A stretch of DNA of 64,000 nucleotides from Octopus bimaculoides (Eukaryota): assembly GCF_001194135.2 (NCBI RefSeq), contig NC_069008.1, forward strand, positions 568,769 to 632,768, written 5' to 3'. This document shows, in pieces, positions 34,301 to 40,300 of this stretch (position 1 is the stretch's first letter; the number at the start of each line of letters is the position of its first letter). Made by a program: the position numbers and the translations under genes. The notes below the pieces were generated by a model. That model worked only from the letters and a program-made list of their open reading frames with translations. It was not told the origin of the DNA and did not search any database.

Positions 34301-37300
34301 AAAACTACTTTTTGGTTTCATGGTTCAATCCCTCTGATAGGCTTTCACCCAGTGCCTTGATCTCCTGGGTTAGGGCTTGGGCCATGATGAACGACACTGG
34401 CTCAAGGTGCCAGCTACAAGCATTGAACCTGCATTCTCTAACACTCTGACCAATCATGCTATTAATAATAATAATAATAATTTCTTTATTAATCACAAAG
34501 GTAAAGCCCTTTCTGCTGTTTGCACAACGCCTGAAATTTTGGAGGATGGAGCTAGTTAATTGCAATTAAACCCAGTATTCAACTGGTACTTATTTTATTG
34601 ACTCCCCCCCCCCCCAAAAAAAAAGAATGAAAGTTCTCTTTGATAGAATTTGAACTCAGAACATGAACACAGATGAAATGGTTCACCACATTTCGTCCAG
34701 CGTGCTACCGATTCTGCCAGCCCACACATTAATGATAATAGTAATAATAATAATAATGGTTGTAAATTTTGTCACAAAGGCTGCCATTTTGGGAGAGGGG
34801 ACAGTCAATTACATCGACCCCAGTGTTTCACTGGTACTTATTTTATCGACCCTGAAAGGATGAAAGGTAAAGTTGACTGCGGCAGAATTTGAACTCAGAA
34901 CCTAGCGATAGGCGAAATGCATTTCACCCAGCATGCTAATGATTCTGCCAACTCACCACCTTTAATAATAATAACAACAATCTTGGAAGCACAGGGTCTC
35001 AAATTTAGGGGCAGGGGACTAGTCGATTACATTGATCCCAGTACCCATGCCAACATGTGGGAAATGGATGTTAAATGATGATGTTGTTGTCATTGCAGGA
35101 GGTGGAGAAGAAGAAAAGAGCGAAAGGGGGTGATATGAGATTGACGAAGCAACAGGAAGAGAAACTACAGATGGCACTGAAGAAGGAGTCACAGATCCGC
35201 AGTAATATACGGATGGTAAGAAGAGGGTTCTGCTTGATGTGTGTGTGTGTGTGTGTAAGTAAACATCGAACAATGAGTGTGAATGCTCAACATCACTTCG
35301 ATGGATGTAACTTTCCATGATTTTTTGTGTTTTAATCTGTGATGGAGACAAAGACCAATTTTTCAGTGTGATTGGCCTGAAGAATTGTTAAGATAAATGC
35401 TAACATGAAACCAATGGTAGCCTTAATACACAAATTAAGTATATATATATATATATATATATAGATATATAGATAGATATATCAGTGACGTGCCACCTAT
35501 GTAGGCAGTACCTGTCTTGAATATAATAGATCAATAGCAACATTTTCCTCTCATGTCAAAATATGCACCTAATTCAATCTAATTATGAAGGTTGCTCTGA
35601 TTACTATGCATTAAATATAAAATATTTTATTTGTTTGTAGATTAGGGAGACATCATTCACCCCTGATTTTCAATCTCAGTATTTAAACTACGCATATTAT
35701 TGCTGTAGTACACATGCTGCGTACATTCCTACAACATTGTTTCCTTTACGTCTTATAAAGGCAGAAGGAAATCTGCCCTCAACTCAGTCACACGCCTGTA
35801 TTTCGCTTATTTTTTCGTGTTTCATTACATAAATGTTACCAGCTGATATATATATATATATATATATATATATTTAAATATATATTTCGGGAATAAATGA
35901 TGGATTTTTTCCCTTATGAGGTTTTTTTCATGCTAGCTACTTGATAAATTCTTGTAAAAGAATTTGTCCTATTATTGAATTTATATATATATATATATAT
36001 ATATATATATATATATATATATATATATATATATATATATATATATATATATATACACACACACACAAACACACATACTCGTCACTAAATATACTTGTTT
36101 ATATTTCAGCTGAACAACAAACTGGTGCGTTGCTGCAATACGCTGCACTCTGCAATCAGGGGTGACTGCAATGCTGTGTGCATGTTCATGTCTAACCTGT
36201 GTCAGGTCCTCATTCCTCTGCTCTACTCACCGCTTTCTGCTGCACCTGTCTCTCGCCTCCTCATCACCCTTGGCAACTCTGCATTCATGGACAAACAGTT
36301 TGGTAAGTGTTCGCTCGTTTTTGTTGCACATGGCTGGGTGTAGGCATAAAAAGAGACGGTGTGTGTGTTTGCGTATGTTTTCTTGTCTGTGCGTATGCAT
36401 GTGTTTGCATGTGAGTGTGTGTGTGACATCAGGTGTTACAGGTGTGTCAATATTTTTCACCCACTTTCTACAGATATTATCGATAGAAATTATAGCCAGG
36501 ACTGATTTCCTGCTACAACATTTCATATCGAAACGTCAGGCGGAAACAAACAACGAGATCAAAGACAAAAACATCTGTTGTTTGTTCTCATTGTTTGTCT
36601 CATCGCTTGTTTACATCTGACATATCAATACGAAACGGTTTCGCTAAAAATCAGAGCCAACTATAATTTCTATGGAATATCAATAGAATAATATGAAAAA
36701 CACTGCTAACACAGTAGAATGTGGTGTTGACTTATAAAACGATTTAATATTATATTTTACAGTAATTTACGGTTGCATAATGAAATACCACGTCCCTACA
36801 AATCAGGAATTAAACTTTTATCTTGTGACTATTTGTTTATTGTAGGTGAAATGATGAGCCATGCCACTGTCCGAGCTCTCAAGCCATACTGCCAGCTGGA
36901 GTCGCAGTGGACACAGGAAGAGGAAGTGCAGCAGGTTGAGCGACTGGTTCAGTTACTGCATGATCGTGTTCAAGCCCGGGTTGGTGGAGGGCCAAAACAC
37001 CCGTTTCCGGCCTCCACGTTTGCCTACTTTTTCCACCTGCTGTCCGTGGCCCTGTCTGGACAACATTGGCCCCTGAACGATGCCAGCACCACCTGCTTGC
37101 GTGCCCTTCAGCTGATCATATGCCACGCTCGCATAAGGCTCAAGACGCACGGTGGGGTTGGAGGGGGCGATGACAACAACAACAAGAGCAGTGCTAAGTC
37201 AAAGAACAGCAAGAAGAGGAGGAGGAAGAAGAACAAGAACAACGAAAACGAGAAGAACGATGGTGGTGGTGGTGGTGGCGGCGGCCAAAAGAAGCCGGGA

Positions 37301-40300
37301 GAGATTGGGGACATTCACCAGGATGAGCAGGTGAAGATAAGGGAGAAGGTGATGATGATGGGGATGGTGAGAATGGAGGAGGACATGGAGGAGGAGGAAG
37401 AGAAAGGTGGTGGTGGTGGTGGCAGCAGCGGTGGTGGTGACTCTAGACTGAGCCATGAAGATGAGGAAATCCTAAGAAAACTGGTGAGTCCCTTCTACAT
37501 TTGTTGTTGTTGTTTAGCCCCTGGTCACTCCTGGTCCAGTGGACCTATGATTAAAGACGTTCCAGCCGTGACCATCCTGTCTTTTATTCAGGCACAGTGT
37601 ATCTAGGACTACATTATTTAATCTGTCCTTCTTTGTTGTTGTTTAGCCCTTGGTCACTCCTGGTCCAGTGGACCTATGATCAAAGACGTTCCAGCCGTGA
37701 CCATCCTGTCTTTTATTCTGACATAATGTATCTAGGACTACGTTATCTAATGTGTCCTTCCTTGTTATCCTGCAGACTTATGATCAAGACATTCCATTTG
37801 TGACCCTCCTGTCTCTCTCTCTCTTTCTCCTTTGCAGTATGACCCTCAGTTGTTACCCCACAAACCCCTCCTGCAGCTGCTAATCAAACTGATTGGCACA
37901 GTGACCTCAACGAAGATCCAGGAGCTCTCCAACACTGCCCTGATCGAGGTGGCACACAGCCTCAGTGGCAACATGGACTGTGCCTTCCCTTCCAACGAAG
38001 ACATTTCTGTAATGCTGTTGGCGCTCGAGGCCCCATCTCTCTCGGTCAAGAGAGCTGTCTTACAGGTCAGTTCACATTTTGTTTACCTTTTCTGCTGCTG
38101 TTGCTGGTCAGGTAGTACGGACATGTTGATGTGTGTGTGTATGTATATATGTGTATATATATATATATATATGTATATGTGTGTGTATATATATATATAT
38201 ATATATATATATATGTATATGTGTGTGTATATATATATATATATATATATAGATGTTTGTGTATGAGTGTATACACGTGTGTGTGGTTCAGTGGTTAGAG
38301 TGTCAGGCCTACAATCATGAGGTAGTGAGTTCGATTCCCAGGCTGCATTGTGTGTTGTGTTCTTGAGCAAGACACTTTATTTCATGTTGTTCCAGTTCAC
38401 TCAGCTGTAGAAATGAGTTGTGACATGTCACTGGTACCAAGCTCTATCGGCCCCTTGGATAACAGGGTTGTACAGTTAACAGGATTCTATTGATCAAAGG
38501 ATCAAATCCTCTCACCCATGCCGACTTGAAAAACAGACATAAAATGATAAATGTATGTATATGTTTACACATTTGTATATGTGTGTGTTTGAATTTGTAT
38601 GTGTATATATATATATATATATATATATATATGTATGTGTCTGTGTATATGTGTGTGCCTATACATTTGTGTGTGTGCGTGTGTGCCTATACATGTTTAC
38701 ACCCGTCCCGCTCACGTGCAGTGCCCTCTCTCTCTCATCTTCATCCTCTTTACTCTGTCGGCAGGCGATGACCTTACTGACCAGTGTCCTACCCAACAAA
38801 GATGATGACTTTGAAATGTGGCTTAAGGTGGTCAAGAAAATATGGATTGCCAAGTTTGACCAGGAAACTGAAGTACAGGAGCTTGCCAAAGTGTGAGTAG
38901 TAGGGGTGGGAATACATTCAAGTTATGCTGGGAGTTGGGGGTGGACTGTTAGGGAGATGAATTGTAAGATGTCTTATGTATAATTGGTTTATTTACCACA
39001 GGTTAGAGACAAAACTGAAAATACAGAATCCACCTCCAAAGATGGTGACCACCCTCATCGAAGATGTCATCCACCCTGAAGAAAGTGTACGTCAAGCTGC
39101 GGCATCAACTGTTGCAGCAGTGCTGCAGTTGCACAAGAAACAGGTGGCGCCAATGATGCACCAACTGTTGGACAAGTACGGCGAGAAGTTGTTTGTAAGT
39201 TGAAAGTTGTTGTTTTTCTTGCTGTGAGATTGGTGTGTGTGTGTGTGTGTGTGTGTGGGCCTCTTCCTGGGTACATGTGTGTGTATATGTATCTACCTAG
39301 GTTTATGTTTGTGTGTATATATTATATATGTAGGTACCTATGTGTGTGCATATATATTGGTATATGTGTGTGTATATATATATACATAAACTGTTGCTAG
39401 TGTTTCTTTCTACTTTCACCAGCTCCCCCCACCAGAAGTAGACAGTTTCGGACGTGTTATCGGTGAACCAGTTCCTGACGATTGGATGTCACGCAGCGGC
39501 ATTGCACTGTGCCTCACCAAGATGGCCCCACTACTCCCCAAACACCTCATTGCGCCACTCTTTGCATTCTACGTGCCAAAGGCGCTAGGGGACCGTGCAC
39601 CGGAGGTGCAAACCAACATGCGTGATGCTGCACTCGCTGCAGTCAATGAACACGGCAAGGTAAGGTAATGTGCTGCTGCACCTTGTACTTTCTGTAAGTC
39701 TCTGTGTGTAGACAAATGTATACATTTAAGTGTTTATATATATCTCAGAGTGGGTTGGCGTTAGGAAGGGCACCCAGCTGTAGAAACTCTGCCAGATCAG
39801 ATTAGAGCCTAGTGCAGCCTTCTGGTTCACCAGTCCTCGGTCAAATCGTCCAACCCATGCTAGCATGGAAAGCGGACGTTAAACGATGATGATGATGATG
39901 ATGATATATAAATTTGGAGGCAGGTATTCTCTGTATAGAATACACTTGGTAGTGTTCCAAAGATTTGAACTCGATCAGGTAGGGGAGTAAATGTTAGGAG
40001 AAGGAGCAAGTTTGGCAAGTTGATATACAAAAAAATATTAAATACATTTAATACAAACAAATGTACATGTTTACATATAAAAAAAAGGGTCTGACTTACA
40101 CAAAATGGAAATGATATCAAGAATTGAGTTGAGGAGGAGTTTTACAAGTCTAACAACTGTTACTGGGGGATTGTATTAAATGTATTTAATATTTTTTAGT
40201 ATATCGACTTAGCTAACTTGCTTGGGCTTACAATTTACTGCTATATCATCATCATCATCATCATCATCCTCATCGTTTAACGTCCACTTTCCATGCTAGC

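What the first reader, a model, noticed from the sequence alone, without database searches (positions are those of the whole stretch)
37148..37483. ~110-aa microsatellite-derived insertion in the GCN1 HEAT solenoid: basic NLS-like cluster, poly-Gly and acidic tract
Seen: after ARIRLKT the frame stays open for 112 codons built of AAC/AAG/GGT/GAG/ATG triplet runs ([30 protein letters not shown]8...[21 protein letters not shown]) up to a gtgagt donor whose phase matches the next conserved exon (YDPQLLP). Recalled human GCN1 has only about 11 residues here. Inference: a lineage-specific disordered polyampholyte loop on a collided-ribosome sensor that might add RNA binding, nuclear import or condensate behaviour.
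Basis: partly seen in the sequence, partly recalled or inferred. Interest (0 to 1): 0.7.

Follow-up and report, generated by a model that had tools for sequence, protein, structure and literature searches.

The report
Octopus-only floppy loop in GCN1
Octopus GCN1, the protein that senses collided ribosomes, carries a roughly 100-residue repetitive, probably unstructured loop that cuttlefish and about 140 other sampled GCN1 proteins lack; it is real and already in public gene models, but it looks like an ordinary repeat-slippage insertion with no shown function.

Summary
Window 37148-37483 is 112 open codons inside one long exon (36846-37483, + strand) of Octopus bimaculoides GCN1. It ends at a normal CTG|gtgagt donor in phase with the next exon (37838, YDPQLLP).

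The frame is open beyond chance: no stops, against 8 and 7 in the other + frames, and only 0.4% of shuffles stay open.

The net insertion is about 100 residues, not 110. The last ten ([10 protein letters not shown]) are ancestral, matching cuttlefish DDVISQL.

The RefSeq O. bimaculoides protein is identical over this exon. O. sinensis and O. vulgaris carry the insert with small codon indels. Argonauta has a 230-residue loop at the same site, with different text but the same order of blocks. Cuttlefish transcripts and 118 other animal GCN1s have 5-17 residues there.

AlphaFold2 gives confident HEAT helices on both sides and pLDDT 32-49 across the insert. The insert DNA is single-copy, so it is not a transposon.

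Most likely this is an incirrate-octopod, slippage-born, blocky polyampholyte surface loop that is tolerated. [quoted passage not shown] RNA binding, nuclear import and condensation remain untested. No transcript data could be reached. Donors near 37150 look non-functional, but an alternative donor at 37366 is possible. Interest is low.

The parts
36846..37483 (+). Single long coding exon of GCN1 (638 nt) that holds the insert. The 30 other mapped exons of this gene are 69-276 nt.
   Evidence: Spliced mapping of XP_052833677.1 (P0003) gives a unique GT-AG solution at each end. The acceptor TTGTAG|GTG scores 9.6.
36846..37147 (+). Ancestral part of the exon: HEAT helices ending in ...[15 protein letters not shown].
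   Evidence: Aligns to all GCN1 orthologues. AlphaFold2 helices have pLDDT above 90, except one short loop at [11 protein letters not shown].
37148..37453 (+). Octopod-specific insertion, 102 aa (XP_052833677.1 residues about 1019-1120).
   Evidence: Absent from cuttlefish and 118 other GCN1s. pLDDT 32-49. Single copy in the genome.
37148..37183 (+). First Gly-rich hinge plus an Asp/Asn run ([12 protein letters not shown]).
   Evidence: Translation. Argonauta has a 23-residue Gly run followed by DD at the same place.
37184..37255 (+). Basic block [24 protein letters not shown], encoded by AAG/AGG/AAC runs. It contains the NLS-like KKRRRKK.
   Evidence: Net charge +9 over residues 15-28. TRF reports AAG x9.7 and a 15-mer x1.9. 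O. sinensis has KKRRKKRK and Argonauta has K10.
37256..37285 (+). Second Gly hinge (ND-G8), encoded by (GGT)6(GGC)2.
   Evidence: TRF reports TGG x6 at 100%. It is two residues shorter in O. sinensis and O. vulgaris.
37286..37405 (+). Non-repetitive middle and acidic block: [40 protein letters not shown].
   Evidence: Net charge -6 over residues 71-84. AlphaFold2 draws a low-confidence helix over [26 protein letters not shown] (model residues 224-249, pLDDT about 46-49).
37406..37453 (+). Third Gly/Ser hinge ([12 protein letters not shown]) plus SRLS.
   Evidence: TRF reports GGT x5.7. It is four residues shorter in O. sinensis.
37454..37483 (+). Ancestral end of the loop, [10 protein letters not shown], a short helix that leads into YDPQLLP.
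   Evidence: Homologous to cuttlefish DDVISQL / DAVLSQL. pLDDT rises to 69-90 here, with helix 268-277.
37484..37837 (+). Intron (354 nt) with donor gtgagt and acceptor ctcctttgcag. It holds a 129-bp tandem duplication of a SINE-like element.
   Evidence: The donor scores 10.5, rank 19 of 37. The acceptor scores 14.6. TRF reports period 129, 2.0 copies, 92%.
37838..38065 (+). Next GCN1 exon ([15 protein letters not shown]...), conserved across animals.
37364..37372 (+). Internal phase-0 GT site, ATG|GTGAGA (the exon would end at 37366). It is a candidate alternative 5' splice site that would delete 39 residues in frame.
   Evidence: PWM score 8.9, within the range of real donors (4.4-14.3). 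Weaker phase-0 sites lie at 37348 (5.5) and 37330 (4.8). No RNA evidence either way.

Best explanation
The stretch is real coding sequence of Octopus bimaculoides GCN1. It encodes an insertion of about 100 residues in what is otherwise a short (5-17 residue) connector between two HEAT helices.

Origin and evolution. The insertion arose after octopods split from decapodiform cephalopods and before Octopodidae and Argonautidae diverged. It most probably arose by in-frame expansion of purine-rich trinucleotide runs (AAG/AGG/AAC, GGT/GGC, GAG/GAA, ATG). It has kept changing by slippage since then.

Physical form. It is a flexible, solvent-exposed loop with the layout Gly hinge, basic K/R/N block, Gly hinge, mixed and acidic Met/Glu block with weak helical tendency, Gly/Ser hinge. 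It leaves the flanking solenoid intact.

Location. [quoted passage not shown]

Most likely consequence (inferred, not shown). It is a tolerated passenger loop with little or no effect on collision sensing. At most it adds weak, non-specific electrostatic contact with rRNA.
For: Shown by tools:
- Gene identity. Pfam EF3/GCN1 HEAT families hit the neighbouring exons. The best hit is RefSeq GCN1 of O. bimaculoides at 98% to a rough exon concatenate, and identical over this exon.
- Coding status. The frame is open against a 0.38% chance. The donor at 37483 is typical for the gene. The ten residues before it are homologous to cuttlefish coding sequence.
- The insert is kept in frame in four annotated octopod proteins from four assemblies: O. 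bimaculoides (two annotation releases), O. sinensis, O. vulgaris and Argonauta hians.
- Lineage restriction. The loop is 111-117 aa in Octopus, 230 in Argonauta and 16 in cuttlefish. The cuttlefish protein comes from transcript contigs of 5 RNA-seq runs, two of them named as Sepia esculenta in papers. It is 5-17 aa in 118 other animal GCN1s and at most 22 aa in 21 further representatives.
- Slippage signature. Triplet runs are visible. The differences between O. bimaculoides and O. sinensis fall in the K/R, Gly and Glu runs as whole-codon indels. Identity is 88.4% with 8 gap columns, against 96.2% for the whole protein.
- Not a mobile element. The insert has a single full-length copy in the 2.34-Gb genome.
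- Disorder. In the AlphaFold2 model (pLDDT 83, pTM 0.79) the flanks exceed 90 and the insert is 32-49. The flanks match HEAT/ARM solenoids.
- Position. A yeast-like representative aligns AHAEAF-E-DPSIPR (about 990-1003) to the site and LEPIVDDFG...DPW (about 1167-1188) to octopus [10 protein letters not shown]...DDW. The published clamp elements are yeast 746-805 and 1160-1176 (bioRxiv 10.64898/2026.09.19.752920). The region N-terminal of the eEF3-like part contacts eS12/eS31 of the colliding 40S beak (PMC8040806).
Against: - No transcript or peptide evidence for octopus was reachable. Two fragment searches found nothing, and the loci of O. sinensis and Argonauta gave no DNA. Inclusion in mature mRNA therefore rests on gene models and sequence logic.
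- Gene models only keep open frames, and triplet slippage preserves frame by itself. In-frame conservation is weaker evidence of selection than it looks.
- The insert has persisted in two families, and the order of blocks (Gly, DD, polar, basic, Gly, acidic, Gly) is shared with Argonauta. Both could mean some constraint, which argues against pure neutrality.
- The placement near the 40S beak is inferred from primary-sequence position, not from a structure.
Confidence: 0.65

Rival explanations
1. The insert is a functional module gained by octopods. The basic block tethers GCN1 to rRNA or mRNA at the colliding ribosome's 40S beak, or acts as a classical nuclear localisation signal. Alternatively, the blocky polyampholyte drives self-association or condensation and so tunes the integrated stress response.
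For: - A basic run is present in all four octopod proteins: KKRRRKK, KKRRKKRK and K10 twice in Argonauta.
- Charges are more segregated than in 98.7% of shuffles (SCD -3.2 against -1.0 +/- 0.55, kappa 0.38).
- The block order is shared between Octopus and Argonauta.
- The site lies between the two beak-clamp elements.
- The frame has been maintained.
Against: - No functional data exist.
- Charge blocks are the automatic product of AAG and GAG runs.
- Length and sequence turn over fast (117, 111 and 230 residues; 40% identity to Argonauta over the alignable columns).
- GCN1 works without this loop in every other sampled lineage.
- No paper in the searched library connects GCN1 with octopus.
Confidence: 0.2
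2. Part or all of the insert is removed from most mature mRNAs, so the long-loop protein is a gene-model artefact or a minor isoform. The routes would be an alternative 5' splice site (37366, 37348 or 37330, all phase 0) or an internal intron.
For: - ATG|GTGAGA at 37366 scores 8.9, inside the range of real donors. Two further phase-0 GT sites score 5.5 and 4.8.
- The exon is 638 nt, against 69-276 nt for the gene's other mapped exons.
- No transcript evidence was found.
Against: - Using those donors would also delete [10 protein letters not shown], which is conserved with cuttlefish and predicted helical.
- GT sites near 37150 score 1.2 (phase 1) and -1.0, below the weakest real donor.
- No usable internal acceptor lies downstream of 37340 (best -3.6), so an exitron is unlikely.
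- Only the coding frame is open.
- Four independent annotations keep the insert.
- From general knowledge: the 75% purine content resembles GAR-type exonic splicing enhancers.
Confidence: 0.12
3. The stretch is an assembly error in a low-complexity region of a gap-rich draft genome.
For: The window has 19 runs of N, and at least two of them remove GCN1 coding sequence.
Against: - There is no N run within 36846-38065.
- The insert is in both O. bimaculoides annotation releases. A near-identical insert is in the separately assembled O. sinensis and O. vulgaris genomes, and a longer loop at the same site is in Argonauta.
Confidence: 0.02

Closest known systems
GCN1 (stalled/collided-ribosome sensor, activator of the eIF2-alpha kinase GCN2) of other animals, e.g. 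cuttlefish and vertebrates
   Same: Full-length orthology and the same HEAT architecture. The flanking motifs (HAxxR ... dPxLLP) and the EF3-like region are the same.
   Different: The connector at this site is 5-17 residues elsewhere and 111-230 in octopods. A yeast-like representative has essentially no loop (AHAEAF-E-DPSIPR).
Lineage-specific low-complexity (homo-repeat) insertions in conserved proteins, produced by coding trinucleotide-repeat slippage
   Same: Runs of Gly, Lys/Arg, Asn, Glu and Met are encoded by triplet repeats. Indels between species are whole codons. The region is predicted disordered and sits in a surface loop of a repeat protein.
   Different: It is composite (five different blocks) rather than a single homopolymer. 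About two thirds of it is no longer recognisably repetitive. It has persisted across at least two octopod families.
[quoted passage not shown] 2026 preprint; yeast 746-805 helices and 1160-1176 loop)
   Same: The insert lies in the same N-terminal arm, between the two clamp elements in primary sequence.
   Different: It is not one of the clamp elements. It sits about 170-190 residues from each, and no structure places it on the ribosome.
Classical monopartite nuclear localisation signals (K-K/R-X-K/R)
   Same: KKRRRKK fits the motif and sits in a predicted disordered, accessible segment.
   Different: Importin binding and nuclear localisation are untested. The motif is a by-product of an AAG/AGG run.

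Membership tests
GCN1 (eIF2-alpha kinase activator / stalled-ribosome sensor) | Full-length sequence orthology to annotated GCN1 proteins | tested here: met
   the best hits are GCN1 of O. bimaculoides (98%), O. sinensis (89%), then molluscs and vertebrates at E down to 1e-213 and below; the RefSeq protein maps exon by exon onto the window.
GCN1 (eIF2-alpha kinase activator / stalled-ribosome sensor) | EF3-like HEAT region and GCN1-specific HEAT families | tested here: met
   PF24987 HEAT_EF3_N (2.4e-24), PF24984 HEAT_EF3_GNC1 (1e-23) and PF23271 HEAT_GCN1 (1.4e-08) on exons at 44.5-48.6 kb.
GCN1 (eIF2-alpha kinase activator / stalled-ribosome sensor) | Binding to collided ribosomes and to the RWD domain of GCN2 | not testable with these tools
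   Needs biochemistry. Known only from yeast and human work.
Intrinsically disordered low-complexity insertion (polyampholyte loop) | Strong compositional bias with a high fraction of charged residues and Gly | tested here: met
   G 25, K+R 22 and D+E 23 of 112 residues. The fraction of charged residues is 0.40 and the net charge per residue is about 0.
Intrinsically disordered low-complexity insertion (polyampholyte loop) | Predicted lack of fixed structure between well-folded flanks | tested here: met
   pLDDT 32-49 over model residues 166-263, with flanks above 90. There is only one low-confidence helix. This is a prediction, not a measurement.
Intrinsically disordered low-complexity insertion (polyampholyte loop) | Absent from orthologues and fast-changing in length and sequence | tested here: met
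Coding trinucleotide-repeat (microsatellite) expansion | Tandem triplet units in the DNA | tested here: inconclusive
   only about one third of the 336 nt is reported as tandem repeat (AAG, TGG and GGT runs, a 12-mer and a 15-mer). The rest is degenerate or unique.
Coding trinucleotide-repeat (microsatellite) expansion | Length differences between relatives located in the repeat runs, in whole codons | tested here: met
   the O. sinensis and O. vulgaris differences fall in the K/R, G8, E-run and G/S runs. This is protein-level only, because no orthologous DNA was available.
Coding trinucleotide-repeat (microsatellite) expansion | Length polymorphism within a species | not tested
   No population data were reachable.
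Classical monopartite NLS | K-K/R-X-K/R motif in an accessible segment | tested here: met
   KKRRRKK at 37211-37231, in a segment with pLDDT below 40.
Classical monopartite NLS | Importin-alpha binding and nuclear accumulation | not testable with these tools
   Needs localisation or binding assays.
Exitron / retained intron inside a coding exon | Internal GT...AG pair with splice-site quality comparable to real sites | tested here: not met
   moderate internal donors exist (8.9, 5.5, 4.8). The best acceptor downstream of 37340 scores -3.6, where 34 of the 37 real acceptors score 5.0 or more.
Transposon-derived exon sequence (exonisation) | Multiple dispersed copies of the sequence in the genome | tested here: not met
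   there is one full-length copy. Other hits are 31-107 nt triplet-repeat fragments.

The most novel reading that the evidence does not exclude
Octopods have equipped the collision sensor GCN1 with a charge-blocky disordered arm. [quoted passage not shown] The basic block contacts rRNA or mRNA, or the arm self-associates, and this changes the threshold or duration of GCN2/ISR signalling in a lineage-specific way.
Probability: 0.07. Interest if true: 0.55.

Novelty: new member of a known kind. Interest (0 to 1): 0.2.

Why it matters
If the loop merely rides along, it is one more example of how repeat slippage pads surface loops of conserved proteins in a microsatellite-rich genome. Its practical value is then for annotation and for aligning cephalopod GCN1.

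If the loop does something, it would be a natural experiment. It is a 100-230-residue charged arm grafted onto the part of GCN1 that spans the colliding ribosome's 40S beak. Swapping it in or out could probe how tolerant or tunable collision sensing is.

Nothing found here raises it above a curiosity. The protein with the insert is already in RefSeq.

Tried and rejected
- PDB sequence search with the exon alone found only linker and tag noise. With the insert removed and a longer flank, it found a 2898-aa chain of entry 8i9x and related entries, and yeast 7NRC. Neither alignment reaches the insertion site.
- Pfam finds nothing on this exon or its flanks. This part of GCN1 is poorly conserved.
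- Two searches for shorter protein fragments found nothing (395-aa and 199-aa queries). They were meant to catch octopod transcript or genomic contigs that span the insert.
- DNA of the O. sinensis and Argonauta loci could not be fetched because the gene ranges are too long. No nucleotide-level comparison, dN/dS or splice-site conservation was possible.
- Transposon or dispersed-repeat origin is rejected.
- An internal intron is rejected for lack of an acceptor.
- Foldseek against the PDB gave only generic HEAT/ARM solenoids, with no specific placement.
- Literature searches for GCN1 with octopus, and for cephalopod low-complexity repeats, gave nothing relevant.
- I recalled the S. cerevisiae Gcn1 sequence from memory to map yeast numbering. 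I used it only as a lead. The mapping reported rests on the database representative P0235.

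
Full report
**What is there**

Window 36846-37483 (+ strand) is one coding exon. After ...[15 protein letters not shown] the frame continues for 112 codons (37148-37483). These read [112 protein letters not shown]. The exon ends at CTG|gtgagt. The next exon begins at 37838 with TATGACCCTCAG (YDPQ), and both junctions are phase 0.

Mapping the RefSeq protein onto the window gave one GT-AG solution for each of 37 junctions. These include 36302/36846 and 37483/37838. At 638 nt the exon is far longer than the 30 other mapped exons of the gene, which are 69-276 nt.

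**Is it more than chance?**

The coding frame has no stop. The other two + frames have 8 and 7 stops, and the three - frames have 1-2 each. Only 0.38% of 5000 dinucleotide-preserving shuffles keep 112 codons open. The open frame is therefore not a side effect of the purine-rich composition (75% G+A).

Tandem Repeats Finder reports short triplet runs: AAG x9.7, TGG x6, GGT x5.7, a 12-mer and a 15-mer each x1.9. Together they cover about one third of the stretch. 'Microsatellite-derived' is a reasonable inference, but only part of it is visible today.

**Gene and organism**

Downstream exons hit the EF3/GCN1 HEAT families of Pfam. A concatenate of the window's exons finds 'eIF-2-alpha kinase activator GCN1 [Octopus bimaculoides]' (XP_052833677.1, 2720 aa). 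Identity is 98% to my rough model, and the sequence is identical over this exon. The next hits are O. sinensis (2774 aa), Argonauta hians (2977 aa), an unnamed 2665-aa protein, and then bivalves, gastropods, a brachiopod and vertebrates of about 2660-2675 aa.

The window is G000 contig C28:568769-632768 in a 2.34-Gb assembly.

The unnamed 2665-aa protein is cuttlefish. It is encoded on transcript-sized contigs from five RNA-seq runs. Two of those runs are cited in Sepia esculenta papers. Its cluster also holds the annotated Acanthosepion pharaonis GCN1.

**Distribution of the insert**

I measured the residues between the R of 'HAxxR' and the P of 'dPxLLP'. All figures are, except that the O. 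vulgaris figure rests on its identity to O. sinensis.

| Lineage | Loop length (residues) |
|---|---|
| O. bimaculoides | 117 |
| O. sinensis and O. vulgaris | 111 |
| Argonauta | 230 |
| Cuttlefish | 16 |
| 117 other animal GCN1s | 5-17 |

A search of 1.84 billion representatives, followed by flank-HMM placement, added 21 more GCN1s that are non-redundant at 50% identity. All of them have 22 residues or fewer at this site. A yeast-like representative has essentially no loop (AHAEAF-E-DPSIPR).

Octopus and Argonauta are both Incirrata, and Sepia is Decapodiformes. The insertion therefore arose after the split between octopods and decapodiforms, and before Octopodidae and Argonautidae diverged. 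Vampyroteuthis, cirrates, squids and Nautilus were not sampled.

The last ten residues before the donor ([10 protein letters not shown]) align conservatively with cuttlefish DDVISQL / DAVLSQL. This makes the donor at 37483 ancestral. The true insertion is 37148-37453, about 102 residues, corresponding to XP residues about 1019-1120.

**How it evolves**

O. sinensis and O. vulgaris differ from O. bimaculoides by 11 substitutions and 8 gap columns. The gaps are whole-codon indels that sit in the K/R, Gly and Glu runs. Identity is 88.4%, against 96.2% for the whole protein and 98.5% for the 3' flank.

Argonauta's loop has different text but the same order of blocks: Gly run, DD, polar N/Q run, basic run, N/D-rich stretch, Gly run, acidic stretch, Gly run, then (E/D)EE(I/V)LRKL.

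The insert DNA occurs once in the genome. Other hits are 31-107-nt triplet-repeat fragments, so it does not derive from a mobile element.

This pattern fits birth and continued remodelling by replication slippage of coding triplet repeats. That is an inference.

**Structure**

AlphaFold2 was run on XP residues 854-1456 with a 60-sequence alignment. It gave pLDDT 83 and pTM 0.79. Helices on both sides have pLDDT above 90. Model residues 166-263, which are the insert, score 32-49. Only a low-confidence helix appears, over [35 protein letters not shown] forms a short helix as confidence recovers. The flanks match HEAT/ARM solenoids such as SF3B1, the PP2A A subunit and karyopherins.

The peptide has 25 Gly, 22 K+R and 23 D+E in 112 residues. 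It has a +9 block (residues 15-28) and a -6 block (residues 71-84). Kappa is 0.38 and SCD is -3.2, against -1.0 +/- 0.55 for shuffles. It is a blocky polyampholyte. However, the blocks follow directly from AAG and GAG runs.

**Where it sits in GCN1**

The site corresponds to about residues 1018-1031 of the 2671-aa vertebrate protein and to about 990 in yeast-type numbering.

[quoted passage not shown] A 2026 preprint defines a 'clamp' on that beak, made of yeast residues 746-805 and the loop 1160-1176 (10.64898/2026.09.19.752920). That loop aligns to octopus [21 protein letters not shown].

The insert therefore lies between the two clamp elements, about 170-190 residues from each. Its position in space relative to the ribosome is inferred, not shown. 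The available PDB alignments do not reach this region.

**Splicing alternatives**

I built position weight matrices from the gene's own 37 junctions.

- The donor at 37483 scores 10.5, which is the median.
- GT sites near 37150 score 1.2 (phase 1) and -1.0.
- Three phase-0 GT sites inside the insert score 8.9 (37366), 5.5 (37348) and 4.8 (37330). They could serve as alternative donors, but using them would also remove the conserved EEILRKL helix.
- No usable acceptor lies downstream of 37340 (best -3.6), so an internal intron is unlikely.

I could not reach any octopus transcript data. Inclusion in mRNA rests on four gene models, the frame statistics and the homology of the exon's 3' end.

**Verdict**

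This is an octopod-specific, disordered, charge-blocky loop in the HEAT solenoid of GCN1.

The most likely account is a slippage-born, tolerated surface loop (confidence about 0.65). A gained function has about 0.2 and rests on composition, position and persistence only. Candidate functions are an rRNA tether, an NLS or self-association. Partial removal by alternative splicing has about 0.12.

The insert is already present in public protein records, although the library searches I ran found nothing describing it. Lineage-specific low-complexity insertions are a well-known kind. Interest is low.

Noticed in passing
window 37504-37766; also 47832, 49201, 49326, 49451, 60957: The intron after the insert exon holds a 129-bp tandem duplication (92% identity) of a short element. 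A 31-mer from it occurs 7 times on the + strand in introns of this gene, against 0 expected. At 49.2-49.5 kb three copies sit about 125 bp apart. It looks like a SINE-like or satellite-forming repeat family.
   Followed up: partly
window 48655-49120 and 50710-51693 (N runs): Assembly gaps fall inside the GCN1 gene. The RefSeq O. bimaculoides protein lacks about 60 residues that cuttlefish has (Sepia 1811-1826, 1944-1953, 1958-1991) and that the O. sinensis model does not lack in the same comparison. This explains 2720 aa against 2774 aa. The O. bimaculoides model is incomplete there.
   Followed up: partly
window about 36990-37020 ([11 protein letters not shown] loop); Argonauta P0005 residues 993-1038: Argonauta hians has a second low-complexity insertion (46 aa, His/Ser/Asp/Gly-rich) in the preceding inter-helix loop. 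That loop is short in Octopus and is the only dip in model confidence upstream of the insert. Neighbouring loops of this GCN1 segment seem prone to expansion in octopods.
   Followed up: partly
PDB entries 8i9x, 8i9y, 8i9z, 8ia0, 8onz, 8pv1-3 (chain LR in 8i9x): A 2898-residue chain whose molecule name is given as 'Ribosomal protein L19' matches the octopus GCN1 segment at E = 2.6e-96. By sequence it is a GCN1 homologue, so the label looks wrong or refers to a fused or mis-assigned record.
   Followed up: no
window 59712-60050: An open frame in the last intron region shows about five tandem copies of a 9-residue unit (VSTGGSRGR / SRSRVSTGG) and its G/T-rich complements. This is a minisatellite just upstream of the final GCN1 exon.
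   Followed up: no
window-wide, e.g. 38129-38251, 44-390, 47120-47280: Introns are packed with TA, TG/CA and TATG-type microsatellites. They give long spurious 'YIYIYI' and 'THTHTH' open frames. This repeat-rich background fits coding triplet slippage as the source of the insert.
   Followed up: no
representative-search hits P0208, P0264-P0287: About ten short proteins (87-245 aa) are about 80% identical to the exon encoding [14 protein letters not shown]...ISALSTPSQ (window 41027-41221). They are probably single-exon ORFs from other cephalopod assemblies. They do not cover the insert, so they were not pursued.
   Followed up: no
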